A stretch of 64,000 nucleotides of DNA, from the IMG/VR virus record IMGVR_UViG_3300023202_000247, positions 257,462 through 321,461 of that record. One strand, 5' to 3'. The notes beneath the pieces are model-generated. The model made no database searches. It was not told where the DNA came from and was given only the letters and a program-made list of their open reading frames with translations. Below are positions 18,019-45,226 of the stretch, piece by piece. Positions within the stretch are counted from its first letter, which is position 1; each line of letters opens with the position of its first letter. The position numbers were made by a program, and so were the translations under genes.

Positions 18019-18020
18019 TT

Positions 18021-22684: not shown

Positions 22685-22955
22685 AAAGAAATCAAAAGTT
22701 TTACAAAAGCAAGAGTTACTGTATTATGCTTTGGAATCGGAAACGGGATACTCTTCTAATACACGTGAAATTTTCAAATCCATTGACTCTAGCTTTTTGG
22801 AGCGAAAATTGAAGGAAGGAAGTTGCCTTCTCGTTCCTGCCATGGAAGAGGTTTTTGACAAGAAAATACCATATGAGCGTGGCAATTTTGAAGAAGGTCG
22901 ATTAAAATGGGTGGAGTATCTGAATGATATCAATAGTAATACCAGTTCTAAATAA
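22674..22955 (+). CDS. Hypothetical protein
   Basis: 93-aa ORF overlapping both neighbours in the operon. Confidence 0.5.
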   Translation: MMSKKKSKVLQKQELLYYALESETGYSSNTREIFKSIDSSFLERKLKEGSCLLVPAMEEVFDKKIPYERGNFEEGRLKWVEYLNDINSNTSSK

Positions 22956-32847: not shown

Positions 32848-32853
32848 ATTGAG

Positions 32854-32861
32854 TATATATA
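32854..32861. promoter_or_regulatory. Putative bidirectional late promoter core (TATATATA)
   Basis: Lies within a 16-bp gap between divergent ATGs at 32847(-) and 32864(+). Confidence 0.5.
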
Positions 32862-32863
32862 CC

Positions 32864-33505
32864 ATGGATAAATATAAGATAATAGCAGATCACTATGACG
32901 AATGCTTTAAAAAACACGGTGATACGGCTCAGGGGGCTGACTGGCCCAATGAAGAAGACCTGCAAGAGCGTTTTAAGGTTTTATCAGCAAATGTAAAACA
33001 ACAGTCAAGTTTAACAACGATATTAGACTTTGGGTGCGGCACTGGCCGTCTGTTATCTTATCTTTTGAATAATAAAAACTTTTTGTTTTTATATTATGGT
33101 GTTGATATAAATCAAGCAGTCATTGACGCTGCTGAGAAAAAATTTGATAATATAAATTTAGTAAAGTTTTATTGTCACGATTTAAGAGAAGATAATTTAT
33201 CATTGGCGCAAGATGCATCAACGACATTTGGTCATGTTATAGCCAATGGTGTTTTTACTGAAAAGCTTTCATTATCTGAAGATGACATGTGGGATTTTTT
33301 CACACAAAAAGTCGGTCTTCTTTGGAAACTTACCAAAAACTCTTTAGCATTCAATGTCATGAGTAAACACGTTGATTATGAACGAGATGACTTGTTTCAC
33401 GTGTCTTATGATAAAATGGCTTCTTTTGTTAGAACCATGACTAATGAATATGCATTTCGTTGTGATTATGGTTTATATGAATACACTGTGTACATGTATA
33501 GGTAA
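32864..33505 (+). CDS. Class I SAM-dependent methyltransferase
   Basis: ILDFGCGTG, YYGVDIN, VIANGVF; start refined to ATG 32864. Confidence 0.88.
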   Translation: MDKYKIIADHYDECFKKHGDTAQGADWPNEEDLQERFKVLSANVKQQSSLTTILDFGCGTGRLLSYLLNNKNFLFLYYGVDINQAVIDAAEKKFDNINLVKFYCHDLREDNLSLAQDASTTFGHVIANGVFTEKLSLSEDDMWDFFTQKVGLLWKLTKNSLAFNVMSKHVDYERDDLFHVSYDKMASFVRTMTNEYAFRCDYGLYEYTVYMYR

Positions 33506-33507
33506 AA

Positions 33508-34188
33508 ATGAATAAAGGTATTGTTATATTTGGAAACAAAGATTTTGCAGAATTAGCAAAGTTTTACATTGAAAATGATCCACCACATTATCATCATGTA
33601 TTTTATAATTCGCGAGTTTGTGCTTTTACAGTTGATGATGAATATGTGACAGAAAATTCGTTCAATGGTCTTCCAGTAATTCCGCTGAGTGAACTGGAAA
33701 AGCACCATCCGCCTGATGAATATCATATGTTTGCACCAATGAGCCATTCTAACATGAATGGTGACCGAAAATCAGTTGTTGAACGTTTGGAGAGCAAAAA
33801 CTATAAGATGATTAACTATGTTAGTTCTAAAGCAACTGTTCTATCCAAACTTCCATCGTTTTCCAATCTATTCATTTTAGAAGATAACACCATTCAGCCA
33901 TTTGTTAAAGTTGGAAAGAATATTGTTATGTGGAGTGGTAATCATATTGGACATCATAGTACAATAGGTGACGACGTTTTTTTCACATCACATGTTGTTT
34001 TGAGTGGTCATTGTAAAGTTGGCAACGGATCGTTTTTTGGCGTCAACTCTACGATTCGAGATGGTGTGAAAATTGGAGAAAAATCCTTGGTATCTATGGG
34101 GGCTTTAATTACCAAAGATACGGATTCTTGTGGTGTTTATATGGGAGTTCCAGCTAAGAAAATAAAAACTATCGATGAAGTGGGTTAA
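33508..34188 (+). CDS. NeuD/PglD-family sugar acetyltransferase (left-handed beta-helix)
   Basis: Hexapeptide repeats (IQPFVKVGKNIVMWSGNHIGHHSTIGDDVF), terminal YMGVPAKKI. Confidence 0.9.
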   Translation: MNKGIVIFGNKDFAELAKFYIENDPPHYHHVFYNSRVCAFTVDDEYVTENSFNGLPVIPLSELEKHHPPDEYHMFAPMSHSNMNGDRKSVVERLESKNYKMINYVSSKATVLSKLPSFSNLFILEDNTIQPFVKVGKNIVMWSGNHIGHHSTIGDDVFFTSHVVLSGHCKVGNGSFFGVNSTIRDGVKIGEKSLVSMGALITKDTDSCGVYMGVPAKKIKTIDEVG

Positions 34189-35095
34189 GCAAGGAAATAT
34201 ATTTTCGCGTCGACATGCACAAGTTCCAACGGTTGATGTGCTCGGAAAGACTTGGCGTGTGTACTATGCTTCTAGAGATTCTAGAAATAGAAGTTATACT
34301 ACATTTGTAGATTTAGATGCTGAGAACCCAAGACTCGTTTTGAATGATTTCAAAAAACCAATTTTGGATCTTGGAGCACCTGGGTGTTTTGATGACTGTG
34401 GTATAATGCCGAGTCATGTTATAAACATTGGTTCAGTTAAAAGAATGTATTATGTTGGATGGACCAAAAGACAGACGGTACCATATCACAATGGTATTGG
34501 TGTTGCCGAAAGTTATGACAATGGACTTACATATCACAAACTTTTTGATGGTCCTATCCTAACAACTACGGCGGAAGAACCATATTTTTGCGGAACATCA
34601 TGGGTAATTTTCGATGAAGAAGATGTGACATTTAAAATGTATTACATGTCTACTACTGAGTGGAGAGAAGTGGATGGTAAAATGGAGCCTCGATATCATA
34701 TTAAATATGCTGAAAGTATGGATGGTATCAAATGGGTTAGGGCTGGACACATTGCTGTCGATTATGCCAATGAAAATGAAGGTGGTCTGGTAAAGGCGAC
34801 CATCTTACGCAAAAAACACTATCACATGTGGTTTTCTCATAGAAGCATAAACGATTATAGACGCAATAAAGATAATACATATAAGATAGGTTACGCTACT
34901 AGTGAGACGGGGTTTTACTGGGAACGTAACGACGCGCAGGCAGGAATATCTCTTGGAGAAAATTCCTGGGATGATGAAATGATTTGCTACCCACATGTAT
35001 TTGAGCACAAAGGTAAAATACATATGTTGTATAATGGTAATGGTTTTGGAGCCACAGGTTTTGGCTGGGCTACGTTGGAGGACTTTAATGTCTGA
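34175..35095 (+). CDS. Five-bladed beta-propeller glycosidase-like protein (GH43/GH130 clan)
   Basis: Repeating blades: AQVPTV, PILDLG.PG.FDD.G, RMYYVG, IGVAES.D.G..W, MICYPHV, LYNGNGFG. Confidence 0.7.
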   Translation: MKWVKQGNIFSRRHAQVPTVDVLGKTWRVYYASRDSRNRSYTTFVDLDAENPRLVLNDFKKPILDLGAPGCFDDCGIMPSHVINIGSVKRMYYVGWTKRQTVPYHNGIGVAESYDNGLTYHKLFDGPILTTTAEEPYFCGTSWVIFDEEDVTFKMYYMSTTEWREVDGKMEPRYHIKYAESMDGIKWVRAGHIAVDYANENEGGLVKATILRKKHYHMWFSHRSINDYRRNKDNTYKIGYATSETGFYWERNDAQAGISLGENSWDDEMICYPHVFEHKGKIHMLYNGNGFGATGFGWATLEDFNV

Positions 35096-35966
35096 TTTTG
35101 TTAATGATTTTTTTAACTTTGTTGATGTTCATTCGGATGAATTTTGTGAAAATGGTTACGTGTTATTAAAACAAGTAATTGATGAAACAATATTAGATAT
35201 AATACGTACAGATGCTCAAACAGTATTTATAAATGCAGCACAGCATTCTGATATCATAGATACTGAAGAGCTATGGGATGACTCTGAAAAATTTGAAGAA
35301 AACGTTACGAGTTGGATGACACAACTCTTTCAAAAAGATTTTGAGTATTTTCTCAATTGTGGAAAGCTTGTTCAAAATTTACCAGAGCTGCACAAATTGG
35401 GATCATCTGATGCGCTAACGAATGCGATGCTTTCAATTGGAAATTATTTTCCTGTCATTTGTACTAGACCAGTTCTATATTTCAATATGAAACAGTTAGC
35501 TAAGGATGAGGTGTTTTATAAAAGCCCACCACATCAAGATTGGAGAAGCATGCAGGGAAGTTTGAATTCAGCAATTGCCTGGGTTCCTCTTTGCAACATC
35601 GATGATGATATGGGACCACTAGAAATTATTCCAAAGAGTCACAAGTGGGGATTACAAGAGACAGTTGAAGACAAGTGGTTCCGACACATTGATGGACTGG
35701 ACGATGATCAATTTGAAAAAGTTAATGTAGAAAAAGGCGATCTTCTTCTCTTCTCATCATTTTTGATTCATCGAAGCGGTAATAACACGTCCGACAAAAT
35801 TAGGTGGTCCTGTCATTTTCGTTACAATGATGCAAGTGAACCAACATTCATGGAACGAAAGCTTCCAACTCCTTATGTTTATAAACCACAACAAGAGTTG
35901 ATTACACCTGAGTTTCCTTCAGGTGAAGATATTAAAAGAATATTCACTCCAAGTAAAAAGAATTAA
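35088..35966 (+). CDS. Phytanoyl-CoA dioxygenase (PhyH) family 2OG-Fe(II) oxygenase
   Basis: PPHQDW (HxD), AWVPL, GPLEIIPKSH, IHRSGNN...R; start refined to 35088 after GGAGGA. Confidence 0.85.
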   Translation: MSDFVNDFFNFVDVHSDEFCENGYVLLKQVIDETILDIIRTDAQTVFINAAQHSDIIDTEELWDDSEKFEENVTSWMTQLFQKDFEYFLNCGKLVQNLPELHKLGSSDALTNAMLSIGNYFPVICTRPVLYFNMKQLAKDEVFYKSPPHQDWRSMQGSLNSAIAWVPLCNIDDDMGPLEIIPKSHKWGLQETVEDKWFRHIDGLDDDQFEKVNVEKGDLLLFSSFLIHRSGNNTSDKIRWSCHFRYNDASEPTFMERKLPTPYVYKPQQELITPEFPSGEDIKRIFTPSKKN

Positions 35967-36615
35967 GCCATCCATATATATCTGATTTACTATAAGTCAT
36001 CATTTGATGGATTATAGAAAGATAAGGAAAGTTTGATGGTATTTGTTTCATGTGAATAAATTTCAAGTCTATGTCGCCGAAATTTTTTTGGTCATATAAA
36101 TGTTTTCCGCCGGGTGCATTGATGTAACATTTGGCGGATTTCTTTTTGCAAATGTCTATAATGCGTTTACTCCCATGTAAATCACTTGTTTCCAACTCTG
36201 AAGACTTTGTAATTTTAGTTGTGATATCTAGATAATCACAAATCATTTTGATGCCCAACTCATTGAGCTGGGCAATTGTTTTGCTATCTGAGTTCAAACA
36301 ATCTGCCACCAAACTAAAAACTTTTACAAAGTATGGTGATCTTTTATAATTTAGGTCTATTGTTTTTAGTATTGAATTTTTCCATTTCCTGTCAGAATGA
36401 ATATAAGTTTCATTTATTTTTTTGTTTTGACTTGGTTTGTTAATAGAACATGAAATGTATTTCGGTTCATTACCGATCAATATTTGATTTCGATGCACCC
36501 AGCCACGTTTGATATAGTTGACATCATCGTATAAAACAAATTCATCAACTGCGTTTATCATTTGAAAATACCCAATATATGGAAAGAAATATGGTTGCAT
36601 TATAGCAAGTTTCAA
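35944..36615 (-). CDS. wbqC: WbqC-like family protein
   Basis: MKLAIMQPYFFPYIGYFQMI..VDEFVLYDDVNY; YINAPGG..LY. Confidence 0.9.
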   Translation of the reverse strand: MKLAIMQPYFFPYIGYFQMINAVDEFVLYDDVNYIKRGWVHRNQILIGNEPKYISCSINKPSQNKKINETYIHSDRKWKNSILKTIDLNYKRSPYFVKVFSLVADCLNSDSKTIAQLNELGIKMICDYLDITTKITKSSELETSDLHGSKRIIDICKKKSAKCYINAPGGKHLYDQKNFGDIDLKFIHMKQIPSNFPYLSIIHQMMTYSKSDIYGWLNSFYLE

Positions 36616-37628
36616 TTTATCCTCGCGAATTCTTTTATTGCGTTTATTATAGTTTCAATTTGATTTTTTGTCATAGAATCATTTAACGGAAAGTTTACTA
36701 TTCTGTTGTAGATATCGTTTGCGATGATATCATCTTCCAATAGCGGTTTATAGTATTTGCCGGTTATTATTCCAAGATTAGTAAAATACATATTATCAAC
36801 ATTATTGTTGAATAATACTGGTAGGTTGCCATATACTATTCCATCACTATAATTAAATAAATTTATGTTATCAGGTATGTTGTTTATTATTTGACTCTGA
36901 TTATAAATGTGCTTATCTTTGTTATATTTTTCGAGATGGGACAATATGTATGCGGCAGTTATATCGCTCATCTTGAAATTTGAAGACATAACATTAAAGT
37001 CTCTACTATGACGAAATCCGAAATTAGTTATCGACTCAACCGCTTCGTATTCATCTTTTGGTACAACTATGAAGCCACCTTCTCCGACACCAAGGTATTT
37101 GGTATGATGTAAGCTACCAAAACTATACTTTCCATAGTTACACATATTTCTACCATTTATGATAGATAGCGGTGAACTAGCATTATCAAATATGACAACT
37201 TTGTTTTTTAATGATGACCAATGTTCTATATTTGCATTTGACCCAAATGTATTTGTTATAATGATACCGTCATAATGATTACCAATATCAACAGGCAGTG
37301 TTTTCGTATCCGGATCTATTTTCTCGATGGAAACATCAAATGAATTTGATACAACTGATGATGGGAATGTGAACGATGGAGTAACCCATCGTAACTTACG
37401 TGCAGCATTTTGCTCTGCTAAAAACATCAAAACGTGTAATGCAGCTGTTCCGTTGGAAACGCATAGTATATCCTTATGATCGGAAAGTTCCAAAACATTA
37501 CGAAGTTCATTTTCTAGCATCCGTTTTACCGGACCACCATTAGTAAAATGATTCAGTTTGTTAGAGATGGAAAGCAGTTTACTAACCCGTTGGTTTTTCC
37601 AATGTTTTTTAGCTACAAAGTTAATCAT
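36612..37628 (-). CDS. DegT/DnrJ/EryC1/StrS PLP-dependent sugar aminotransferase
   Basis: FTNGGP, SNGTAALH, IFDNASS, SLHHTKYLGVGEGG (PLP Lys), NFKMSDITAA. Confidence 0.9.
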   Translation of the reverse strand: MINFVAKKHWKNQRVSKLLSISNKLNHFTNGGPVKRMLENELRNVLELSDHKDILCVSNGTAALHVLMFLAEQNAARKLRWVTPSFTFPSSVVSNSFDVSIEKIDPDTKTLPVDIGNHYDGIIITNTFGSNANIEHWSSLKNKVVIFDNASSPLSIINGRNMCNYGKYSFGSLHHTKYLGVGEGGFIVVPKDEYEAVESITNFGFRHSRDFNVMSSNFKMSDITAAYILSHLEKYNKDKHIYNQSQIINNIPDNINLFNYSDGIVYGNLPVLFNNNVDNMYFTNLGIITGKYYKPLLEDDIIANDIYNRIVNFPLNDSMTKNQIETIINAIKEFARIN

Positions 37629-37663
37629 GTTCTACAAATATGCATTCTGTGCCATATATTTTG

Positions 37664-38569
37664 ATGTTTCCAATTGTTTTAGCTAGTCATTTGGTAAGGT
37701 CTTCTAAGCCGGGGGAAATCCATGGTGGATTGTATCTTGCCAATTTTAACAATAAAAAATACGAATGTGTCATGGATTGGAGCGATCCAATAAATTGGCA
37801 AGGTCGTGGAGCAGATAGAGGTCTTCGCGGTGTATCTGTCGTTGATAAAAACACAATTTATGTACTTACATCACGCTCATTGCTTTTATTAGATGGCAAA
37901 TTTAGAGTTGTTAAAAGATTTGAAAATGAATATCTTTTGTTTTGTCATGAAACTTGTAGATTCAATAACAAGTTATTTATAGCTTCTACAGGATATGACT
38001 CGATTATTTCATTCAATTTAAATACTAAGAAGTTTGATGAGGGGTTTTGTGTTCGTGGTAAACGATTGAAAATATTCAATCCAAATCAAAAGGGACAATT
38101 GAAAGATAATGACACGATGCATATCAACAACGTTTATGCTGATGAGCGAGGTATTTTCTTTTGTGGGACAAGTTTGGACAAGTTGTATCGTATAAAAAAC
38201 AACAATGTTGAAATATACTGTAATTCTCCAAAAGGTACTCACAATTGTAGACCATTTAATAGTAGTGAGATAATATATAATGATACTAAAAGAAACTGTA
38301 CCGTAATTCGTAAAAACGGTGGGGGCGGTGAGTTCAAATTTCCAATAAAAGCAATTCCTCGTCAAAACATGACTAGTCTTCAAGGTAATGATGCCATTGC
38401 AAAACAGCCATTTGCTCGCGGATTAGTTGTTGACAAAGGTTACATCATAAATGGTTCATCTCCAGCATTACTTTCTTGTTATGACATATCTAGCAAGAAA
38501 AAGGTTAAAGAGATAAAAATGTCTAACGACATTAGGGTTACCATTCATGGTATGGCGGTGTATGAGTGA
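37664..38569 (+). CDS. Beta-propeller protein, function unknown
   Basis: Blade-like repeats (GLRGV, CHET..FNNKLFIASTGYD, MHINNV, FARGL); alternative start at 37640. Confidence 0.5.
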   Translation: MFPIVLASHLVRSSKPGEIHGGLYLANFNNKKYECVMDWSDPINWQGRGADRGLRGVSVVDKNTIYVLTSRSLLLLDGKFRVVKRFENEYLLFCHETCRFNNKLFIASTGYDSIISFNLNTKKFDEGFCVRGKRLKIFNPNQKGQLKDNDTMHINNVYADERGIFFCGTSLDKLYRIKNNNVEIYCNSPKGTHNCRPFNSSEIIYNDTKRNCTVIRKNGGGGEFKFPIKAIPRQNMTSLQGNDAIAKQPFARGLVVDKGYIINGSSPALLSCYDISSKKKVKEIKMSNDIRVTIHGMAVYE

Positions 38570-39324
38570 AAGCTTTGATTCTCACATATGATCGTCAAAT
38601 TTCTTTTGCAAATTTGGTAATAGAATCTTACAATCATTTATGGCCCGACAATGGTTTTGAGTGGATAGTACCATTCAATAATAAAAAACCAAACTTTACA
38701 ACAACCAAAAATATAAATTTTATTCAATCTCCAAGTATGATTCGTTCCACCGTAGAACGATTGCTTCACGGTTTGCCAAATGATGAATTTGTATTTTGGG
38801 CTTTTGACGATGTATATCCTCGCAAAATTGCCGACATAGATACGTTAAAAGCATCTAGAGATTTGATATACAATGGTAAACCAAACAGGTTTGATTCTAT
38901 TAGAATAGCTCATAGTATAGCAAACCCAAATGCTTGGAAAGGTGAAAAGGTTGATATCAATGGTACGAAGTACATTCATAAGAATGGTTTTGGTTCATTT
39001 TGGTTTCACCAATTCATAAATGTAAAAACACTGAAAAAGATATTTTTAAATAACAGGCTGAAACATAATTATTCTATTAGGCAGGTTAATTCGTTCCCAC
39101 CACATAAAGTGTTCATGCCCACCAAAAAGATTTGTTTCTTTGGTGAGACAGCTAGACACTCAGCAATGACGAAAAACGCTTACGATGATTTGAAGAAATA
39201 TGGTATAAAAATACCAAAAATACCATTTATGAAAACTGTAGTAATAGTTGACAATCATACTAAAGCTGGAAAAAACGAGCTACGTCTCGTAGCTCGTGGT
39301 CATAAACCACCGGTGATATCATGA
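38566..39324 (+). CDS. Putative GT-A-like glycosyltransferase
   Basis: ALILTYD..., FVFWAFDD (DxD-like); context. Confidence 0.4.
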   Translation: MKALILTYDRQISFANLVIESYNHLWPDNGFEWIVPFNNKKPNFTTTKNINFIQSPSMIRSTVERLLHGLPNDEFVFWAFDDVYPRKIADIDTLKASRDLIYNGKPNRFDSIRIAHSIANPNAWKGEKVDINGTKYIHKNGFGSFWFHQFINVKTLKKIFLNNRLKHNYSIRQVNSFPPHKVFMPTKKICFFGETARHSAMTKNAYDDLKKYGIKIPKIPFMKTVVIVDNHTKAGKNELRLVARGHKPPVIS

Positions 39325-40244
39325 CAAATTTGAGAAAAATGAAGCTGCATATGCAAAGCCCGGTACAAATGTATTACCCAGAACCGGAGTTTTTTATAGA
39401 AAAGATAAAGAATAAAGAGAGTTTTTATTTCATTCGTTTTCAAATTGAATGGTGGTTGATATTGCGTTTTGGTCTCTGGGCCATGGGGTACAAGGACAAA
39501 CCCGTTCCGAGGCATCTGTTCAAAGACAAACAGTTTCTAAAACGTTGGGGTAAAGAAGTTGTTAGGGCTTGGGATACAAAACGCAAGGGTAAAAAACGAA
39601 AATACAAATTTGATCCCAATGTATTTGCTGACTTGATTGAAATATCAGTTTCACCCAAACCTAAGGATTTTTACTTTGCATATAGTGATCGTGCATTTAG
39701 CAAGCACTTGCCGCCAAAAGCTTGGGATCATAGATGGAAGTGGACATCTGAATTTTTTCAACAATTGTTCCCGCCAGGTGAGATCAATTACTGTTCTTTA
39801 ATATTTAGAAACTGGGCACAATCTGGCAAAATTCATAAAATAATGGAAAGTGTGAAAAATGAAAACGTCTTAATCATCGGACCTTATTATTATAAAAATT
39901 TTGCTAATAAACTCGGCTTCAAGAATGCTAAATACATAGAGATACATCATACACATGCTACTATAAATATAGATAAAAAACTAAAAGAGATTCGGCGTAA
40001 GCGTCAAGAATGGTTTGGCGATGAATATGTATTTGGATTGGTGGTTGGCGGGGCTGCTGGCGCATGGCTAATTCGAAACATGTATGGAATGAAAAATACA
40101 TCTTTCATAGAGTTTGGCAGAGCTTTAGATGTTTACTACTATTATGATAAAGTTTATAAACAAATTCCACAATGGATTTGGGGAACATGGATGGAAAACC
40201 ACAAACCCAAATGGGTTGCAGAGCACAAGGAGTTGATACGATGA
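39321..40244 (+). CDS. Putative GT-D-fold-like glycosyltransferase
   Basis: YFIRF..E, NVLIIGP, LVVGGAAG, FIEFGRALD resemble GT-D-fold (DUF1792-like) proteins. Confidence 0.45.
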   Translation: MTNLRKMKLHMQSPVQMYYPEPEFFIEKIKNKESFYFIRFQIEWWLILRFGLWAMGYKDKPVPRHLFKDKQFLKRWGKEVVRAWDTKRKGKKRKYKFDPNVFADLIEISVSPKPKDFYFAYSDRAFSKHLPPKAWDHRWKWTSEFFQQLFPPGEINYCSLIFRNWAQSGKIHKIMESVKNENVLIIGPYYYKNFANKLGFKNAKYIEIHHTHATINIDKKLKEIRRKRQEWFGDEYVFGLVVGGAAGAWLIRNMYGMKNTSFIEFGRALDVYYYYDKVYKQIPQWIWGTWMENHKPKWVAEHKELIR

Positions 40245-40807
40245 GTTTAGTTATTGCTGCTATGGGTAGATGTGGTTCTACCATGCTTTTTTCTACACTA
40301 AAGAGAAAGTTTTACAAAGCCATATTTGAAAAAGATTTAGCATCATCGTATGCTGATGGTTTAATCATCAAGACTCACGACTTTGCACCTAAACAATTGA
40401 AAAACTGTAAAGTTATTTATCTATTTGGAGATCCTAGAAATATAGTTCTTTCAGCTCATACTAAAGGTAAAATTGATAGGAGAAGACATTATAGAAACAT
40501 GCATGCTCCTTTCAAAGAAGAATTTTTGCAGAATGATACATTTGTAATTAAAGATACTTTGAGGCTGGAAGATAATTTTGATTCATGGTATAAAAAACAA
40601 TCATTTCCTTTGTTGACTCTTAGATACGAAACTCTTTATGATAATCGAGACGTGTTGAAACAATTTTTGGGATTTCCTCCTATGTTGCCAAAACCCAGAA
40701 ACAGAACGACGAACTGGGAAAAGTTTCCCAGAGCTAACAGGTTGGACAAAACATATGCAGGTCTTTTGAAAAAAATAGAAGAGGCTGAAGATGCAAAAAT
40801 TTGGTAA
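40241..40807 (+). CDS. Sulfotransferase-like protein (P-loop)
   Basis: GRCGSTML, IKTHD, YLFGDPRNIVLS, LRYETL; start refined to 40241 after AAGGAG. Confidence 0.7.
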   Translation: MSLVIAAMGRCGSTMLFSTLKRKFYKAIFEKDLASSYADGLIIKTHDFAPKQLKNCKVIYLFGDPRNIVLSAHTKGKIDRRRHYRNMHAPFKEEFLQNDTFVIKDTLRLEDNFDSWYKKQSFPLLTLRYETLYDNRDVLKQFLGFPPMLPKPRNRTTNWEKFPRANRLDKTYAGLLKKIEEAEDAKIW

Positions 40808-40811
40808 CGCT

Positions 40812-40823
40812 GATATATAAATA
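40812..40823 (+). promoter_or_regulatory. Putative late promoter GATATATAAATA
   Basis: Identical to 8066-8077; ends 3 nt before the gmd ATG; no RBS present. Confidence 0.55.
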
Positions 40824-40826
40824 AGC

Positions 40827-41825
40827 ATGCAAAATGCTATTATCACTGGTATAACTGGGCAAACCGGTTCATACCTAGCCAAAATTTTATTAGATAAAAA
40901 TTACAAAGTGTATGGTGTTGTTAGAAGAAGTAGTAACTTCAATACTCAACGCATAGACGATGTCTATGACCACCATAATTTAGAGTTGGTATATGGAGAC
41001 CTAGCTGATTATTCTTCGATTACCAGTATAGTAAATGATGTTAAACCGGATTTATTTTTCAACATGGCGGCAATGAGCCATGTGAGAGTATCATTCGACA
41101 TTCCAGAATACACAATGGATGTTACTGGAACTGGTGTGATTAGATGTTTGGAAGCGATACGTCGCAATAGTCCTAATACACGTTTTTTGCAGGCATCATC
41201 ATCCGAAATGTTTGGTAGCTCTCCACCTCCTCAAAATGAAGAAACTCCTTTTCATCCTCGTTCACCGTACGCCGTTGCAAAAGTTGCTGGATATCATGCT
41301 ACTGTAAATTATAGAGAAGCATATGATATGTTTGCAAGCAATGCAATAAGTTACAATCATGAGAGTCCATTTCGAGGGGAGACATTTGTAACTCGTAAAA
41401 TAACAAGAGCCGCTACTAGAATAAAATGTGGGTTACAAGATAAATTGTATCTTGGAAACTTATCGGCAAAAAGAGATTGGTCTCATGCTAAAGATGTTGC
41501 AAATGCCATGTATATGATTTTAACTTCTGATAAGCCAGATGATTATTGTATAGCTTCTGGTTATATGTACAGCGTCGAGGAATTTGTCGAGAAGGTATTT
41601 TCTAGTTTAGAGTTAAATTGGAAAGATTATGTAGAAATTGATCCTCGTTATTTTCGCCCGACTGAGGTTGATGCTTTGTGTGGAGATTCCAGTAAATTGC
41701 GAAAAAATCTAGGATGGGAACTGGAGTATGATTTTGATTCTCTGGTCAAAGAGATGGTTGATGAGGATATGAAATCTGCACAGAAAGAAAAACTCGTATT
41801 AGATTATGAGAAAGGTGACGGTTGA
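40827..41825 (+). CDS. gmd: GDP-mannose 4,6-dehydratase
   Basis: ITGITGQTGSYLA, AAMSHVRVSF, QASSSEMFG, RSPYAVAK, NHESPFRGETFVTRKIT. Confidence 0.97.
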   Translation: MQNAIITGITGQTGSYLAKILLDKNYKVYGVVRRSSNFNTQRIDDVYDHHNLELVYGDLADYSSITSIVNDVKPDLFFNMAAMSHVRVSFDIPEYTMDVTGTGVIRCLEAIRRNSPNTRFLQASSSEMFGSSPPPQNEETPFHPRSPYAVAKVAGYHATVNYREAYDMFASNAISYNHESPFRGETFVTRKITRAATRIKCGLQDKLYLGNLSAKRDWSHAKDVANAMYMILTSDKPDDYCIASGYMYSVEEFVEKVFSSLELNWKDYVEIDPRYFRPTEVDALCGDSSKLRKNLGWELEYDFDSLVKEMVDEDMKSAQKEKLVLDYEKGDG

Positions 41826-42745
41826 GATTACTGATAACTGGAAGTGGCGGATTTCTTGGTAAAAATGTCGTACCAAAATTTGCCAAAGAACAAAGTGTAA
41901 CGCTATTGACACCTCGTAGCCGGGAACTCGATCTTCTCGACCAAAGCTCTACGATGGTGTATTTCGAGCGTGAGCGGCCTGATGTAGTTTTGCACATGGC
42001 GGCTGTTTGCGGTGGTATCAAAGCAAATATGAAAGCGCCCGCGGACTTCATTCATCTCAATTCAGAGATGACTATAAATATATTTAACGCAATTAAAAAA
42101 TTTGATGTAAAATCTCTCTACACTTTAGGTTCAGTTTGCTCTTATCCTTGTCATACACCGGTTCCATTTAAAGAGAAAAACATTTGGAATGGTTATCCTG
42201 AAGCAACAAATGCTCCATATGGAATTGCAAAGAGATTGCAAATGGAGATGCAAAAGCAGTATGCAGATCAATATGGGTTGAAAGGTGCACATCTCATACC
42301 TGTTAACTTGTTTGGGCCTCAGGACCTATTCGATTTAGAAAATAGTCACGTTATTCCAGCTTTGATAAACAAATTCGTTACAGCTGTTAAAAATAACAAA
42401 CAGTCTGTAGAGTTGTGGGGTAGTGGGCAGGCGACTAGAGAGTTTTTGTATGTCGAAGATTGTGCACATGCGCTTCATAAAGCTGTCATGCTAGAATTAG
42501 ATTATCCAGAACCAATAAACCTCGGAACTGGAGAATCAATAAAAATAATTGATCTGGCAAATATAATAGCTGATATAGTAAAATATAGGGGTAATATAGT
42601 TACTACTGGTGATGTTAATGACGGGCAGCCTTTGAGGCAGCTCGACGTTTCACGTGCATATGAAACATTTGGTTTTCGTGCGCGAACCAGTTTGAGAGAA
42701 GGTTTGGAAAAAACCATAAAATGGTATGAGGAAAATTATGAGTGA
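41822..42745 (+). CDS. fcl: GDP-L-fucose synthase (epimerase-reductase)
   Basis: GSGGFLG, HMAAVCGGI.AN...P, YGIAK, NLFGP.D.FD...SHVIPALI, REFLYVED. Confidence 0.93.
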   Translation: MRLLITGSGGFLGKNVVPKFAKEQSVTLLTPRSRELDLLDQSSTMVYFERERPDVVLHMAAVCGGIKANMKAPADFIHLNSEMTINIFNAIKKFDVKSLYTLGSVCSYPCHTPVPFKEKNIWNGYPEATNAPYGIAKRLQMEMQKQYADQYGLKGAHLIPVNLFGPQDLFDLENSHVIPALINKFVTAVKNNKQSVELWGSGQATREFLYVEDCAHALHKAVMLELDYPEPINLGTGESIKIIDLANIIADIVKYRGNIVTTGDVNDGQPLRQLDVSRAYETFGFRARTSLREGLEKTIKWYEENYE

Positions 42746-44237
42746 TGATAAAAATAAGACCTTGGCGGATAAATTGGCAGCTAAGATGCTTGAAAAGGAC
42801 ATTATAACAAAGTCAAAGTTTGAAGAGCAGGTTGTTGCTTTTTCTAGTTGGCCAAAAGAAACGTTGCAAAAAATTGAATCTTTTTTGTTTGACGGTAAGT
42901 CTAGTGATACCGGTGGAGTGGTAATCAATACAGGAACAGATGATAAAGATAAAGCATCTTTAAAAGTTTCTGATTCTGGTGCCACTGTAGAGGCCGACAA
43001 AATTGATTTTTTTACCATCAAATTTGATTCGGATGGAAACATAGTATCTAAATTTCCAGTTATGAGCAGGGAACAAGAATACAAGCTCATAGAGCGTTTC
43101 AAAAATGCATTAAGAGAACAACAAGAGTTACATTATGGTTCATCGGTTGAAGATGGCAGTTCTTTAAAAGATGTAGATATTCCAAAGCGTATAAAAAATT
43201 TGGTAAAAGATTCTTCTAGGAAGGCTGAGTTTAAAAATGATGACGAACTATATGATAAGTTTTCTTTAGCTGAGTTGAAAGATTTAAAAGAGAAACTTTC
43301 TTTAGCTGAGTTGAAAGGTTTAAAAGAGAAACTTTCTTTGAATGATTTGAAAGAGATGAAAGATCCTGAACTTACTGAAACGCCTCTTGGCGATGCTAAA
43401 AAATACTTGGGTGATAAATCTTATACGCTTAAAGATGTTGATGATGGTAGAGTTATCAAACGAACTCTCAATTGGGAGTCTGATGCCAAGTGGTTCAAAA
43501 ATCAATACCCTGGAGCATTCAGACGTTCCGATAATGGTGTTGCAAAAACTAGTAGCGAAGCAGTTGCTGGTATCGCCATTAAACCCGGTGAGCCATCACG
43601 ATATGTAGTTGTTAATGGTGAAAAGAAAAGGGAAATTAAACTAACGCCTGATAAAATGAAAGAGTCAAAATCGAAAACAATTGGTAAAAGCCGTGGTAGT
43701 TTGAGAAATGTTCAATCTGAAAGCGAATATAAAAAACGTGAAAATGAGCTAAAACAATCACTATCACAATGTGACGTTAAAGAGGTACAAGACGCTATTG
43801 ATGACTTAAACCAAGTCGACCCTGTTCAAAAACATATTCAATCAGTATCAAACGGAAATAATCTTACTGATATTCTAGAAAGTGATGAAGACTTTAAAGA
43901 TTTGTTGAAAGATTATTCATTTTTAGATGAGCAGAAAAATACAACTAATCTTTTAGAAAAGCTTGAAGAGAAGATTGTTGAAGCAACTCGTGTTGAACTA
44001 AAGGCGAAACGTGAGTTATTTTTGTTAAATCGTGCATTGGAAGCCTCTTATGTTGCGGCTGAAAAAGAACCAGTTACGCTTGAGTTGCCCAAGCCTGTTG
44101 AAGTAAAACCAACATCTAAACAGTTTTTGGATACTTTCAAAGACATAACTGAAAGCGTTTTGGGTAAAGAATATCATTCTGGAGATGATTGGGAAAAGAT
44201 TTATAATAGAAACAGATTAAGGCATATCAGAAAATAA
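42738..44237 (+). CDS. Hypothetical charged, low-complexity protein with a 12-aa tandem repeat
   Basis: 500-codon ORF after GAGGA; D/E/K-rich; contains SLAELKDLKEKL repeat. Confidence 0.7.
   Translation: MSDDKNKTLADKLAAKMLEKDIITKSKFEEQVVAFSSWPKETLQKIESFLFDGKSSDTGGVVINTGTDDKDKASLKVSDSGATVEADKIDFFTIKFDSDGNIVSKFPVMSREQEYKLIERFKNALREQQELHYGSSVEDGSSLKDVDIPKRIKNLVKDSSRKAEFKNDDELYDKFSLAELKDLKEKLSLAELKGLKEKLSLNDLKEMKDPELTETPLGDAKKYLGDKSYTLKDVDDGRVIKRTLNWESDAKWFKNQYPGAFRRSDNGVAKTSSEAVAGIAIKPGEPSRYVVVNGEKKREIKLTPDKMKESKSKTIGKSRGSLRNVQSESEYKKRENELKQSLSQCDVKEVQDAIDDLNQVDPVQKHIQSVSNGNNLTDILESDEDFKDLLKDYSFLDEQKNTTNLLEKLEEKIVEATRVELKAKRELFLLNRALEASYVAAEKEPVTLELPKPVEVKPTSKQFLDTFKDITESVLGKEYHSGDDWEKIYNRNRLRHIRK
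43261..43362 (+). repeat. 36-bp coding tandem repeat, two near-perfect copies plus one degenerate copy
   Basis: TTTCTTTAGCTGAGTTGAAAG(A/G)TTTAAAAGAGAAAC at 43261 and 43297; degenerate copy from 43333. Confidence 0.9.
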
Positions 44238-44257
44238 TAGACTCAAGTAAATAATTA

Positions 44258-45226
44258 ATGAGTAAGAAAAAGAAAATACTAGTAACTGGTTCGTGTGGTT
44301 TCATATTTAGTAACTTTATGCGATATGCAATCACACAACATGATGTGAATTACAAATTCATAAGCGTTGACAAAGTTAAAAGTTCACGTGTGATGTACAA
44401 TGTATTCTCAAATAAAAATCACACGTTCCACATTGGTGATGTTGCGGATTCGCACTTCATGGATGTAGTATTTCAAGTTGAAGAACCTGATATAGTAATT
44501 CACGCGGCAGCTGAAAGTTTCGTGGATAGTTCTATAAAAAATGCGGACCCGTTTATTCATTCCAATGTTCGTGGAACACAAACTGTTATCGATGCTTGTG
44601 TAAAGTGGGGCGTGGAACGTTTAGTATATATTTCATCAGATGAGATATATGGACAACTAACTAGTGAAGACGATCCTCCATGGCCCGAAACTGCACCAAT
44701 GAATCCACGAAATCCATATAGTGCAACAAAAGCCGCAGGAGAGTTGTTGGTCAAAGCGGCTCATCAAACACATGGATTGAATTATAATATAACTCGTTGT
44801 TGTAATAATTATGGTCCAAGACAAGATCCTGAAAAGTTTCTTCCAAAGATAATTAAATGTGTTATCAACAATGAAAAGATACCAGTTTATGGTCAAGGTA
44901 GACAGGTAAGAGATTGGCTATATGTAAGTGATAATTGTAGGGCTGTTCTTGATATATTAGAAAAAGGAGCTATAAACGAAACTTATAATATTGCAGCTAA
45001 TCAAGAATATTCTAATATAGAAATCTGTCAACTAGTATGCAATGCGCTTGGTAAAGGACATGATTTGATTGAATTTGTCGAGGATAGACCAGGACATGAC
45101 TTTCGTTATAGTGTTGATTGTACAAAATTGAAAGGTATCGGTTGGGAGCCTGAATTCAAGTTCAAACAGGGATTGGAAGAGACTGCCAAGTGGTATATAA
45201 ATAACAAAAGTTGGTTTTTGAAGTGA
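44258..45226 (+). CDS. rmlB: dTDP-glucose 4,6-dehydratase
   Basis: VTGSCGFIFSNF, HAAAESFVDSSI, SSDEIYG, PRNPYSATK, RCCNNYGPRQDPEKFLP. Confidence 0.93.
   Translation: MSKKKKILVTGSCGFIFSNFMRYAITQHDVNYKFISVDKVKSSRVMYNVFSNKNHTFHIGDVADSHFMDVVFQVEEPDIVIHAAAESFVDSSIKNADPFIHSNVRGTQTVIDACVKWGVERLVYISSDEIYGQLTSEDDPPWPETAPMNPRNPYSATKAAGELLVKAAHQTHGLNYNITRCCNNYGPRQDPEKFLPKIIKCVINNEKIPVYGQGRQVRDWLYVSDNCRAVLDILEKGAINETYNIAANQEYSNIEICQLVCNALGKGHDLIEFVEDRPGHDFRYSVDCTKLKGIGWEPEFKFKQGLEETAKWYINNKSWFLK

What the first reader, a model, noticed from the sequence alone, without database searches (positions are those of the whole stretch)
32864..45226. Mimivirus-like amino-deoxysugar pathway: RmlB, DegT, acetyltransferase, WbqC, methyltransferase and PhyH
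Known: an NDP-glucose 4,6-dehydratase followed by a DegT aminotransferase gives a 4-amino-4,6-dideoxyhexose (viosamine-type), which can be N-acylated and O-methylated. Mimivirus uses an analogous set (R141, L136, L142, R132) for fibril glycans. WbqC-family genes accompany amino-sugar acylation in O-antigen loci. Seen: all these types are present here, plus a 2OG-Fe(II) dioxygenase that could hydroxylate the sugar or acyl group. No RmlA, RmlC or RmlD is in the window, which argues against rhamnose as the product. Inference: convergent evolution of a decorated amino-sugar in a tailed phage.
Basis: partly seen in the sequence, partly recalled or inferred. Interest (0 to 1): 0.6.

Follow-up and report, generated by a model that had tools for sequence, protein, structure and literature searches.

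The report
Jumbo-phage glycan island with decorated viosamine
A giant tailed phage carries a roughly 24-kb block of soluble sugar-making enzymes that probably makes GDP-fucose and an amino-acid-decorated 4-amino-6-deoxy sugar; its aminotransferase is a true relative of the Mimivirus enzyme, and the rest of the sugar cassette is a bacterial O-antigen-type cassette.

Summary
No rmlA, rmlC or rmlD was found in the window or in the whole 321-kb phage record (about 75% complete).

- A second dehydratase arm, Gmd plus a GDP-fucose synthase, with fucosyltransferase-family genes nearby.
- The true size of the island, about 21.5-45.2 kb, with roughly ten glycosyltransferases and no membrane protein.

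The DegT enzyme is homologous to Mimivirus L136, not convergent with it. L136 is its best solved relative (E 8e-49); the next is 1e-15.

The block aminotransferase-WbqC-(methyltransferase)-LbH acetyltransferase-beta-propeller-PhyH recurs in the same order in other large phage contigs and in many bacterial polysaccharide loci.

A confident WbqC model is closest to BshC (Z 15.5) and then to class I aminoacyl-tRNA synthetases. In E. coli O121, whose O-antigen carries N-acetylglycine, the gene order is rfbB-rfbA-DegT-WbqC-GNAT.

Best reading: RmlB and the L136-like enzyme make NDP-viosamine. WbqC adds an amino acid to N-4. The product is then acetylated, hydroxylated and methylated, and the glycan is assembled in the cytoplasm, probably on virion proteins. 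The chemistry and the target are inferred, not shown.

The parts
21530..22684 (+). GT4-like glycosyltransferase; upstream edge of the island
   Evidence: PF13439, 31.6 bits against a cut-off of 28.5
22924..23625 (+). GT2 glycosyltransferase
   Evidence: PF00535, 71.4 bits
23714..24580 (+). GT2 glycosyltransferase
   Evidence: PF00535, 30.9 bits
24577..25488 (+). 303-aa ORF with no family match
   Evidence: No Pfam or NCBIfam hit
25485..26243 (+). GT2 glycosyltransferase
   Evidence: PF00535, 82.5 bits; 59% identical to a gene in L021
26245..28347 (+). 700-aa ORF with a weak GT1-like C-terminus
   Evidence: PF00534, E 0.009, below cut-off; conserved in L021 and L006
28338..29273 (-). GT10-like (fucosyltransferase family) candidate
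   Evidence: No direct Pfam hit, but 46% identical over its full length to the L006 gene that has PF00852 on record
29295..30047 (+). GT2 glycosyltransferase
   Evidence: PF00535, 71.3 bits
30044..30757 (+). GT11-family (alpha-1,2-fucosyltransferase family) glycosyltransferase
   Evidence: PF01531, 95.2 bits
31170..32117 (+). GT1-like glycosyltransferase
   Evidence: PF13524, 77.1 bits
32104..32865 (-). Sulfotransferase-like ORF (a lead only)
   Evidence: PF13469, E 0.0075, below cut-off; PSB-loop-like PRGGTT at residue 24
32849..33505 (+). Class I SAM methyltransferase
   Evidence: PF08242, 40.6 bits. Orthologues follow WbqC in phage loci L015, L022 and L027 and in bacterial L054, L083, L052 and L046
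33508..34188 (+). NeuD/PglB/VioB-type left-handed beta-helix N-acetyltransferase
   Evidence: TIGR03570, 142.3 bits (cut-off 160.8). Best PDB match is PglD, 1.3e-13, and His149 aligns with what I take, from my own knowledge, to be PglD's catalytic His. About 50% identical to the genes next to WbqC in bacteria
34175..35095 (+). Five-bladed beta-propeller, glycoside hydrolase/phosphorylase-like; role unknown
   Evidence: AlphaFold model pLDDT 91.4. Foldseek: GH137 5mui 6.6e-13, then GH43 and GH130. Found in 11 of 27 viral and 31 of 80 bacterial loci beside WbqC/LbH
35088..35966 (+). PhyH-family Fe(II)/2-oxoglutarate dioxygenase (ORF opens at 34995; likely start at 35088)
   Evidence: PF05721, 80.4 bits. 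HQD...H motif conserved, GGAGGA before the ATG at 35088, and homologues align from residue 50
35944..36615 (-). WbqC-family protein; proposed amino-acid:aminosugar amide ligase
   Evidence: PF08889, 205.8 bits. Model pLDDT 92.9. BshC Z 15.5 with 215 of 223 residues aligned, class I LysRS Z 12.5. O121 context
36612..37628 (-). L136-like PLP sugar 4-aminotransferase
   Evidence: PDB 7mfo L136, E 8.1e-49 over residues 7-336. HHTK with Lys177 invariant in 20 homologues. The only DegT in the record
37640..38569 (+). 309-aa conserved ORF, distantly DUF4915-like
   Evidence: 77 homologues, the most distant carrying PF16261; conserved in L006 and L021
38566..39324 (+). 252-aa conserved ORF with no family match
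   Evidence: No Pfam, NCBIfam or PHROG hit; conserved in L006 and L021
39321..40244 (+). GT-D-fold-like glycosyltransferase candidate
   Evidence: ESM Atlas: feature scores 0.93-0.95 and TM 0.63-0.67 to GT-D / GT-D-like clusters, mostly phage; conserved next to the aminotransferase in L005, L006 and L021
40172..40807 (+). Sulfotransferase-like ORF (likely start at 40241)
   Evidence: PF00685, 21.3 bits against a cut-off of 22; GRCGST loop; equivalent weak hits in L005 and L006
40827..41825 (+). GDP-mannose 4,6-dehydratase (Gmd)
   Evidence: TIGR01472, 443.8 bits against a cut-off of 415
41822..42745 (+). GDP-L-fucose synthase-like epimerase/reductase
   Evidence: NF047922, 262.9 bits (cut-off 500). 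Best PDB hits are all GDP-fucose synthases, with E. coli GMER at 3e-56 over the full length. Its start overlaps the Gmd stop
42726..44237 (+). 503-aa highly charged, repeat- and coil-rich protein; not enzyme-like
   Evidence: No family hit; GRAVY -0.84 and visible LSLAELK repeats
44258..45226 (+). NDP-glucose 4,6-dehydratase (RmlB)
   Evidence: TIGR01181, 371.7 bits against a cut-off of 365.1; PDB 2hun 7e-82; YSATK at residue 154

Best explanation
This is a glycan-biosynthesis island of about 24 kb (roughly 21530-45226) in a jumbo contractile-tailed phage. Every protein in it is soluble. It supplies two activated sugars from host nucleotide-sugar pools.

Arm 1. Gmd and the Fcl-like enzyme convert host GDP-mannose to GDP-L-fucose. 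The GT11 and GT10-like transferases would use it.

Arm 2.
- RmlB converts host dTDP- or UDP-glucose to NDP-4-keto-6-deoxy-D-glucose.
- The L136-like PLP aminotransferase makes NDP-4-amino-4,6-dideoxyhexose (viosamine type).
- WbqC has a class I aminoacyl-tRNA-synthetase/BshC-like fold. It attaches an amino acid to the 4-amino group as an amide, either through an ATP-made acyl-adenylate (as in MshC/BshC) or from aminoacyl-tRNA.
- The PglD/VioB-type acetyltransferase then caps the free amine.
- The PhyH dioxygenase and the SAM methyltransferase hydroxylate and methylate the acyl group or the sugar.

About ten glycosyltransferases (GT2, GT4, GT1-like, GT-D-like), perhaps with sulfotransferases, then build the glycan in the cytoplasm on a non-lipid acceptor, most likely virion proteins.

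Shown: gene identities, homology to L136, the conserved cassette, the WbqC fold, and the absence of rmlACD and membrane components from the record.

Inferred: substrates, order of steps, the identity of the acyl group, and the target.
For: Gene identities:
- Family scores above the curated cut-off for RmlB and Gmd.
- The Fcl-like protein matches only GDP-fucose synthases at the top of the PDB list.
- The aminotransferase matches L136 at 8.1e-49 over its full length, with the Schiff-base lysine conserved.
- L136 converts UDP- and dTDP-4-keto-6-deoxyglucose to viosamine (PMC9614988).

Dehydratase partner: RmlB-type dehydratases lie within 10 kb of the L136-like gene in 18 of 27 viral loci. Nine of ten scanned have TIGR01181 as their best family.

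Conserved cassette: the order AT-WbqC-(MTase)-LbH-propeller-PhyH occurs in phage loci (L015 9998-14639, L027) and in bacteria (L054 8927-13758 and many others).

WbqC:
- BshC Z 15.5 (rmsd 2.9, 215 of 223 residues), class I LysRS Z 12.5, MshC Z 7.1. Foldseek also puts BshC first.
- E. coli O121 has rfbB-rfbA-DegT-WbqC-GNAT, and its O-antigen carries N-acetylglycine (PMC7685785).
- WbqC-GNAT fusion clusters exist.

Acetyltransferase: it keeps a His that aligns with what I take, from my own knowledge, to be PglD's catalytic His.

Cytoplasmic assembly: no predicted transmembrane segment in any island protein, and no Bac_transf or WecA-type initiating transferase in the record.

Phage identity: a baseplate gene lies just upstream.
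Against: - No biochemical data exist for any protein here.
- WbqC shows no sequence-profile similarity to BshC (hhalign probability 0.3). BshC's own activity has, to my knowledge, not been reconstituted.
- The acetyltransferase belongs to a family that normally acetylates the sugar 4-amine directly. That would compete with WbqC for the same nitrogen.
- Gmd in the same island could feed the aminotransferase instead, giving perosamine.
- The Fcl-like and LbH proteins score below their NCBIfam cut-offs.
- The record is only about 75% complete, so missing genes (rmlA, transporters) could lie in the unseen part.
- No RNA data were found.
- The phage is uncultured and its host is unknown, so virion glycosylation is untested.
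Confidence: 0.55

Rival explanations
1. A plain Mimivirus- or VioA/VioB-type pathway. RmlB, the L136-like aminotransferase and the LbH acetyltransferase make NDP-N-acetylviosamine, and the methyltransferase O-methylates it (as proposed for R132). WbqC, PhyH and the propeller act on something else, such as another residue of the glycan or the acceptor.
For: - The LbH protein belongs to the NeuD/PglB/VioB family and keeps a His aligned with what I take to be PglD's catalytic His.
- N-L142 was modelled on PglB and acetylates UDP-Vio4N, and R132 is a proposed 2-O-methyltransferase (PMC9614988).
- Seven viral loci have the aminotransferase followed directly by an LbH gene with no WbqC (L010, L012, L013, L017, L019, L025, L029).
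Against: - The LbH genes in those WbqC-less loci are a different, distant type (26-34% identity). The window's LbH type (about 50% identity) travels with WbqC in phages and bacteria.
- WbqC directly follows and often overlaps the aminotransferase gene in 16 viral loci and in most of the 80 bacterial loci.
- The O121 cluster has no other candidate for adding glycine.
Confidence: 0.2
2. The aminotransferase works on the Gmd product (GDP-4-keto-6-deoxymannose) to give a GDP-perosamine derivative, as in E. coli O157 or Vibrio cholerae O1. RmlB serves another purpose.
For: - Gmd is in the island, and strongly similar Gmd genes (47-68% identity) lie near the aminotransferase in L006, L007, L011, L015 and L017.
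- In L006 no RmlB orthologue is visible within the 10 kb fetched.
- Bacterial loci L078 and L083 have Gmd next to or near the cassette.
Against: - Perosamine synthases match the phage enzyme only at 3e-4, against 8e-49 for L136, which uses UDP/dTDP-4-keto-6-deoxyglucose.
- Gmd is translationally coupled to an Fcl-like gene, and fucosyltransferase-family genes are present, which accounts for Gmd.
- RmlB-type genes accompany the aminotransferase far more often than Gmd does.
Confidence: 0.1
3. Same chemistry, different target. The island remodels the host cell surface polysaccharide during infection (for superinfection exclusion, receptor masking or mimicry), using host lipid carriers and exporters, and does not glycosylate virions.
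For: - In bacteria the same cassette sits in surface-polysaccharide loci with ABC-2 transporter genes and rml genes (L054) or wzx/wzy (O121).
- Serotype-converting phage glycosyltransferases are established (my own knowledge; also cited in PMC12619734).
Against: - No initiating phosphoglycosyltransferase, flippase, polymerase or any predicted membrane protein is in the island or, where searched, in the record.
- The island lies directly after baseplate and large structural-type genes on the same strand.
- Glycosylated virions are known for mycobacteriophages and giant viruses (PMC12619734; PMC9614988).
Confidence: 0.25
4. The glycosyltransferases and sugars hypermodify phage DNA with glycans to evade restriction.
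For: Virus-encoded glycosyltransferases that decorate DNA with diverse glycans have been reported (Pyle et al. 2024, cited in PMC12619734). A UvsW-like helicase and replication genes lie downstream.
Against: - No thymidylate-synthase-family pyrimidine hydroxymethylase was found in the 321-kb record.
- Fucosyltransferase-family and GT-D-like enzymes and an O-antigen-type amino-sugar cassette are typical of protein or polysaccharide glycans.
Confidence: 0.05

Closest known systems
Mimivirus fibril-glycan cluster (R132-L143: R141 dehydratase, L136 aminotransferase, N-L142 acetyltransferase, R132 methyltransferase)
   Same: - The same pathway logic: 4,6-dehydratase, then 4-aminotransferase, then N-acetyltransferase of the PglB/PglD type, with a SAM methyltransferase.
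- The aminotransferase is a true homologue of L136 (E 8.1e-49).
- The genes are clustered with many glycosyltransferases in a virus genome.
- The machinery looks soluble and independent of host membranes.
   Different: - RmlB is nearer to prokaryotic enzymes than to R141.
- There is no L780-type rhamnose synthase.
- The phage adds WbqC, a beta-propeller and PhyH, which are not among the cluster genes the review lists. I did not search Mimivirus for them.
- The phage adds a GDP-fucose arm.
- The acetyltransferase is a stand-alone protein, not fused to a glycosyltransferase.
- The host is a bacterium.
E. coli O121 / Shigella dysenteriae 7 O-antigen genes for Qui4N(N-acetylglycyl): rfbB-rfbA-vioA-wbqC-GNAT
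   Same: Dehydratase, DegT aminotransferase and WbqC occur as consecutive genes, followed by an N-acetyltransferase. The O121 O-antigen carries amide-linked N-acetylglycine; that it sits on the 4-amino sugar Qui4N is my own knowledge.
   Different: - The O121 aminotransferase is a classical DegT of about 370 aa. Bacterial neighbours of WbqC are only 22-30% identical to the phage enzyme.
- The acetyltransferase is GNAT, not LbH.
- O121 has rmlA, wzx and wzy, and has no PhyH, propeller or methyltransferase.
- WbqC's role there is also unproven.
Bacterial six-gene cassette DegT-WbqC-MTase-LbH-beta-propeller-PhyH (for example Flavobacterium resistens, L054 8927-13758)
   Same: The same gene order and 40-50% identity for WbqC, the methyltransferase, LbH, the propeller and PhyH.
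   Different: - The bacterial copy has a classical DegT rather than an L136-like enzyme.
- It sits with rmlA, rmlD, a PglF-like dehydratase and an ABC-2 exporter.
- I found no description of this cassette's product in the held literature.
Mycothiol and bacillithiol biosynthesis (MshC or BshC ligase, then MshD acetyltransferase)
   Same: An enzyme with the class I aminoacyl-tRNA-synthetase fold joins an amino acid to the amine of an amino sugar, and in mycothiol an acetyltransferase then caps the amino acid (my own knowledge). WbqC's model is closest to BshC (Z 15.5), and MshC also appears (Z 7.1).
   Different: - No detectable sequence similarity.
- WbqC is only 223 aa and lacks the extra domains.
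- Its substrate would be a nucleotide-linked 4-amino sugar, not GlcN-malate or GlcN-inositol.
Chlorovirus PBCV-1 GMD (A118R) and GMER (A295L)
   Same: A virus-encoded Gmd plus GDP-fucose synthase pair (listed in PMC9614988).
   Different: The phage genes sit in one operon-like pair next to fucosyltransferase-family genes, and the host is bacterial.

Membership tests
L136-like sugar 4-aminotransferases (a DegT/DnrJ/EryC1 subgroup) | Full-length similarity to L136 clearly above that to other characterised sugar aminotransferases | tested here: met
   7mfo E 8.1e-49 over residues 7-336. The next match is 3ju7 (uncharacterised) at 1e-15, then QdtB 3.5e-6 and perosamine synthase 3e-4
L136-like sugar 4-aminotransferases (a DegT/DnrJ/EryC1 subgroup) | PLP Schiff-base lysine in the HHTK motif | tested here: met
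   Lys177 is invariant in 20 homologues and aligns with the HHTK of L136
L136-like sugar 4-aminotransferases (a DegT/DnrJ/EryC1 subgroup) | Converts UDP/dTDP-4-keto-6-deoxy-D-glucose to viosamine with glutamate as the donor | not testable with these tools
   Needs an enzyme assay. The activity is known for L136 only (PMC9614988)
dTDP-glucose 4,6-dehydratase (TIGR01181 equivalog) | Score above the curated cut-off, plus the YxxxK catalytic motif | tested here: met
   371.7 bits against 365.1; YSATK at residue 154; PDB RmlB 7e-82
GDP-mannose 4,6-dehydratase (TIGR01472 equivalog) | Score above the curated cut-off | tested here: met
   443.8 bits against 415
GDP-L-fucose synthase (NF047922 equivalog) | Score above the curated cut-off | tested here: not met
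   262.9 bits against 500. However, the 18 best PDB matches are all GDP-fucose synthases, with E. coli GMER at 3e-56 over the full length. It works like one, but membership at equivalog level is not shown
NeuD/PglB/VioB sugar N-acetyltransferases (TIGR03570) | Score above the cut-off; N-terminal domain plus a left-handed beta-helix with a catalytic His | tested here: inconclusive
   142.3 bits against 160.8, covering profile positions 23-202 of 202. His149 aligns with what I take, from my own knowledge, to be PglD's catalytic His
WbqC family (PF08889) | Pfam gathering score | tested here: met
   205.8 bits against 21.3, covering profile positions 1-215 of 218
BshC family (PF10079) | Sequence-profile similarity to BshC | tested here: not met
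   hhalign probability 0.3 against a Bacillus BshC. Only the fold is shared (Z 15.5)
PhyH Fe(II)/2OG dioxygenases (PF05721) | Gathering score and the HxD...H iron-binding residues | tested here: met
   80.4 bits against 22; HQD and the distal His are conserved in five homologues
Mimivirus clade-A 12-gene glycan cluster | An R141-type dehydratase, an L780-type UDP-rhamnose synthase, and an L142 fusion of acetyltransferase with a glycosyltransferase | tested here: not met
   - RmlB is closer to prokaryotic RmlB than to R141.
- The only other SDRs are Gmd and an Fcl-like protein.
- The acetyltransferase is a stand-alone protein of 226 aa.
- Only the L136 homologue is shared specifically.
Wzx/Wzy- or ABC-dependent surface polysaccharide locus | An initiating phosphoglycosyltransferase and membrane export or polymerase proteins | tested here: not met
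   No PF02397 or PF00953 match in the record. No transmembrane-like segment in the 26 island proteins. The record is about 75% complete

The most novel reading that the evidence does not exclude
A lineage of jumbo phages carries a self-contained, membrane-independent glycosylation machinery of the kind so far documented in detail only for giant eukaryotic viruses. It would make GDP-fucose and an aminoacylated, hydroxylated and methylated viosamine, and would build a complex and possibly sulfated glycan on its own virion proteins.

Its aminotransferase belongs to a subfamily shared by large phages and Mimivirus. That subfamily was not found in 301 sampled genomes of the phylum holding L054 (Flavobacterium), which points to exchange between phages and giant viruses.

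The same analysis assigns the orphan WbqC family as the long-missing enzyme that puts amino acids on 4-amino sugars of O-antigens, using an aminoacyl-tRNA-synthetase-like fold.
Probability: 0.3. Interest if true: 0.8.

Novelty: new variant of a known kind. Interest (0 to 1): 0.62.

Why it matters
**Phage glycans.** Virion glycans change how phages are seen by hosts and immune systems, but detailed phage sugar pathways are rare. In GenBank phage records the L136-like enzyme was found only in one 735-kb uncultured huge phage, deposited as two records. This island shows that large phages can carry giant-virus-scale glycan machinery.

**Link to Mimivirus.** It connects the Mimivirus viosamine enzyme to a family that is widespread in large phage contigs.

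**WbqC.** It gives a concrete, cheaply testable function for WbqC. WbqC is common in bacterial O-antigen and capsule loci (at least 593 loci in species-representative genomes), and I found no experimental characterisation in the literature held. The proposal is that WbqC is an aminoacyl-tRNA-synthetase-fold ligase that makes N-aminoacyl amino sugars such as the N-acetylglycyl-Qui4N of E. coli O121.

**An uncharacterised cassette.** It also flags a six-gene cassette shared by bacteria and phages whose product has not been described.

Tried and rejected
- Megablast of the 12.4-kb region against 50,697 phage records found no match.
- A close-relative scan of viral contigs found only the same phage on a second contig (L004, 100% identity). 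An alignment-based scan was needed to reach relatives.
- PHROGs gave nothing useful for the unknown ORFs. NCBIfam gave nothing for unk309, unk252, unk307, either sulfotransferase-like ORF, unk303 or unk311.
- WbqC has no sequence match in the PDB even at E 1.
- hhalign of the WbqC alignment against a Bacillus BshC was negative (probability 0.3), so the BshC link rests on structure only.
- All-against-all BLASTP of the island proteins showed no paralogy among the unknown ORFs apart from a weak link between the 253-aa sulfotransferase-like ORF and unk252 (E 0.003).
- A search for L136-like enzymes (E 1e-40 or better) in 301 genomes sampled from the phylum of Flavobacterium resistens found none. 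This is a sample, not proof of absence.
- Literature searches for WbqC, for phage plus viosamine, and for Qui4N/glycyl/BshC found no paper on WbqC function or on phage viosamine. The paper on the Qui4N pathway (PMC2168959) is not held.
- The sequencing-run search found only DNA metagenomes, so expression could not be checked and read laying was not used.
- The ESM Atlas structure library was unavailable for the propeller model.
- Rhamnose synthesis was considered and rejected: no rmlA, rmlC or rmlD, and the third SDR matches GDP-fucose synthases, not an L780-type enzyme.
- The large representative-protein search, complex prediction and alternative genetic codes were not used, because nothing called for them.

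Full report
**Setting**

The window is the last 64 kb of a 321,461-bp IMG/VR virus record that CheckV rates about 75% complete. A gp6-like baseplate wedge gene lies at 8099-11338 (phrog_6, E 2e-33). A DnaB-like helicase, a ribonucleotide reductase, a UvsW-like helicase and a TubZ/PhuZ-like tubulin are also present. GC content is about 34-43% and nearly all genes are on the + strand.

**Checking the observation**

- A class I SAM methyltransferase (32849-33505).
- A NeuD/PglB/VioB-type hexapeptide acetyltransferase (33508-34188).
- PhyH (the ORF opens at 34995; the probable start is 35088).
- WbqC (35944-36615, minus strand).
- DegT (36612-37628, minus strand).
- RmlB (44258-45226), which scores above NCBIfam's equivalog cut-off.

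There was no TIGR01207, PF00483 or PF00908 match, and only three SDR genes were found. The caveat is that a quarter of the genome is unseen.

- Inside its own coordinates lies a bona fide Gmd (40827-41825; TIGR01472, 443.8 bits against a cut-off of 415). Its stop overlaps the start of an epimerase/reductase whose best solved relatives are all GDP-L-fucose synthases (E. coli GMER 3e-56 over the full length).
- Upstream there is a GT11-family gene (30044-30757). There is also a gene (28338-29273) 46% identical to a relative's gene that has a GT10 hit on record. A GDP-fucose arm therefore exists beside the amino-sugar arm.
- The island really runs from about 21530 to 45226 and holds about ten glycosyltransferase-type genes: one GT4-like, four GT2, one GT11, one GT10-like, GT1-like genes, and a GT-D-like candidate.
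- It also holds two weak sulfotransferase-like ORFs with P-loop-like motifs.
- None of the 26 island proteins has a hydrophobic segment typical of a membrane span. The record has no Bac_transf or WecA-type initiating transferase.

**The aminotransferase**

Its best solved relative by far is Mimivirus L136 (7mfo, E 8.1e-49, residues 7-336 against 17-354). The next is an uncharacterised protein at 1e-15. QdtB, perosamine synthase and the others are at 3.5e-6 or worse.

The HHTK lysine is invariant in 20 homologues. L136 makes viosamine from UDP- or dTDP-4-keto-6-deoxyglucose (PMC9614988). The key enzyme is therefore homologous to the Mimivirus one, not convergent with it.

The subfamily is large:
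- 509 proteins at E 1e-5 or better were found in metagenomes. The best 120 listed are 42-54% identical (one at 95%), many on contigs of 100-340 kb.
- 24 IMG/VR loci carry it.
- In GenBank phages it appears only in one 735-kb uncultured huge phage, deposited as two records.
- It was not found at E 1e-40 or better in 301 sampled genomes of one bacterial phylum.

RmlB, by contrast, is nearer to prokaryotic RmlB (7e-82) than to Mimivirus R141 (4e-53).

**A conserved cassette**

I ran tblastn with the island proteins against the viral loci. Within 10 kb of the L136-like gene I found:

| Neighbour | Viral loci (of 27) |
|---|---|
| WbqC | 16 |
| LbH | 17 |
| RmlB-type SDR | 18 |
| The 306-aa ORF | 11 |
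| PhyH | 9 |

Nine of ten of the RmlB-type SDRs I scanned have dTDP-glucose 4,6-dehydratase as their best family.

The recurrent order is AT-WbqC-(MTase)-LbH-306-aa ORF-PhyH, for example L015 9998-14639. Scanning species-representative bacterial genomes with the WbqC alignment found at least 593 loci. In the 80 kept, the same order recurs:
- DegT-WbqC-(MTase)-LbH-306-aa ORF-PhyH, for example Flavobacterium resistens L054 8927-13758.
- LbH is about 50% identical to the phage protein and the 306-aa ORF about 40%.
- The bacterial DegT is only 22-30% identical to the phage enzyme.

In L054 the cassette sits with rmlD, rmlA, a PglF-like dehydratase, an ABC-2 exporter pair and GT2 genes. The phage block is therefore a bacterial polysaccharide cassette in which the aminotransferase is of the L136 type.

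In the window and its nearest relatives (L005, L006), the AT-WbqC pair is inverted relative to the rest of the cassette.

**WbqC**

No solved structure matches WbqC by sequence. A model built from 11 phage homologues is confident (pLDDT 92.9).

Foldseek puts BshC first (E 1.7e-3, probability 1.0). An exhaustive structural comparison with 48,161 chains gives:

| Match | Z |
|---|---|
| BshC (rmsd 2.9, 215 of 223 residues aligned) | 15.5 |
| Class I lysyl-tRNA synthetase | 12.5 |
| Glutamyl-, tyrosyl-, cysteinyl- and arginyl-tRNA synthetases | about 7-9 |
| MshC | 7.1 |

From my own knowledge, BshC and MshC join cysteine to the amine of a glucosamine derivative, and in mycothiol synthesis an acetyltransferase then caps the cysteine.

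In E. coli O121 the annotated order is rfbB-rfbA-DegT-WbqC-GNAT-wzx. The O121 O-antigen carries amide-linked N-acetylglycine (PMC7685785). From my own knowledge it sits on Qui4N, and Pfam's note on the family mentions a proposed glycine transferase. Clusters of WbqC fused to GNAT exist, many of them from phages.

Together these make WbqC the best candidate for an amino-acid:4-aminosugar amide ligase. Two cautions apply:
- hhalign finds no sequence similarity to BshC.
- At 223 aa the protein could work from aminoacyl-tRNA, as cyclodipeptide synthases do, rather than by adenylation.

**Other parts**

- The 306-aa ORF folds confidently (pLDDT 91.4) as a five-bladed beta-propeller. It is closest to GH137, GH43, GH32 and GH130 enzymes. 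D73, E171 and D266 are invariant in nine homologues. Whether it hydrolyses, phosphorolyses or transfers is open.
- PhyH keeps its HxD...H residues.
- The LbH protein keeps a His that aligns with what I take, from my own knowledge, to be PglD's catalytic His.
- Relatives L005 and L006 carry a Methyltransf_24-type enzyme in place of the window's Methyltransf_12/25 type. Methylation therefore seems to be retained through different genes.
- The 503-aa ORF between Fcl and RmlB is highly charged and repetitive, and looks non-enzymatic.

**Most likely mechanism**

Host GDP-mannose and dTDP/UDP-glucose are tapped; the record has no nucleotidyltransferase.
1. Gmd and the Fcl-like enzyme give GDP-fucose.
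2. RmlB and the L136-like enzyme give NDP-viosamine.
3. WbqC aminoacylates N-4.
4. LbH acetylates, PhyH hydroxylates and the methyltransferase methylates.
5. The glycosyltransferases assemble a glycan on a soluble acceptor.

Several observations make virion proteins the most likely target: the lack of any membrane or lipid-carrier component, the position right after baseplate and large structural-type genes, and the precedents of Mimivirus fibrils and mycobacteriophage virions. This is an inference.

Three alternatives remain and are scored as rivals:
- Host-surface remodelling.
- A plain N-acetylviosamine pathway.
- A perosamine route from the Gmd product.

DNA glycosylation is unlikely, because no pyrimidine hydroxymethylase was found.

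**Novelty and verdict**

The pathway type is known from O-antigens and from Mimivirus. Three things are new:
- Its presence, with an L136 homologue and a fucose arm, in a large all-soluble island of a jumbo-phage lineage.
- The recognition of a six-gene cassette shared by bacteria and phages.
- The structural assignment of WbqC.

I found no paper in the held library that describes any of these. Everything about chemistry and target is inferred from sequence, synteny and predicted structure. The phage is uncultured, its host is unknown, and no RNA data were found.

- No other genetic code was used.
- Read laying and the large representative-protein search were not used.

Noticed in passing
window 20945-21505 (+): A 186-aa 2H phosphoesterase sits just before the glycan island. 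PF13563 scores 38.7 bits. The anti-CBASS Acb1 family PF23474 scores 25.3 bits, just under its cut-off of 27. It may be a cyclic-nucleotide-degrading counter-defence enzyme.
   Followed up: no
window 45246-46625 (+): A TubZ/PhuZ-like tubulin (PF00091 59 bits, TubZ-like_C 27.4 bits) lies directly after RmlB. This type of protein is typical of some jumbo phages.
   Followed up: no
window 52579-56286 (+): A 1235-aa ribonucleotide reductase large subunit has an endonuclease-like segment (phrog_4645) at residues 303-499 between RNR-matching parts. This suggests an intein or homing-endonuclease insertion.
   Followed up: no
window 11338-20945 (+): A 2226-aa ORF and a 974-aa ORF follow the baseplate wedge gene. 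The 974-aa protein has a dockerin type I / EF-hand-like calcium-binding segment at residues 586-654. These are possible fibre or adhesin proteins and possible glycan acceptors.
   Followed up: no
window 35944-37640: The aminotransferase-WbqC pair is inverted relative to the rest of the cassette. It overlaps the PhyH 3' end convergently by 23 nt, and only 11 nt separate it from the divergent next gene, so any promoters must lie inside coding sequence. The same inversion is seen in L005 and L006 but not in L015, L027 or the bacteria.
   Followed up: partly
L006 5154-6850 and 17376-18197: The closest relative that carries the full island has two extras absent from the window. One is an AMP-binding (adenylating) enzyme of 487 aa beside a 78-aa ORF, which may be a carrier protein and would point to a different acyl decoration. 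The other is a LAGLIDADG-like ORF among the glycosyltransferases.
   Followed up: no
L005 8657-10165: A related phage contig encodes a 502-aa protein with WGR, PARP regulatory and PARP catalytic domains next to the sugar cassette.
   Followed up: no
LR756501.1 300184-301179: The 735-kb uncultured huge phage is the only GenBank phage with an L136-like aminotransferase (37% identity, E 1e-47). It is deposited as two records, LR756501.1 and LR756503.1.
   Followed up: no
window 32849-33505 versus L005 5931-6554 and L006 12485-13102: The methyltransferase of the cassette is a Methyltransf_12/25 type here and in L015, L021, L022 and L027. In L005 and L006 it is replaced by a Methyltransf_24 type at a different position. 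This is an apparent non-orthologous replacement.
   Followed up: partly
window 37640-38569 (+): The 309-aa ORF belongs to a family of at least 77 proteins found in phage-like contigs and in bacterial and archaeal MAGs, all labelled hypothetical. Only its most distant members carry DUF4915 (PF16261).
   Followed up: partly
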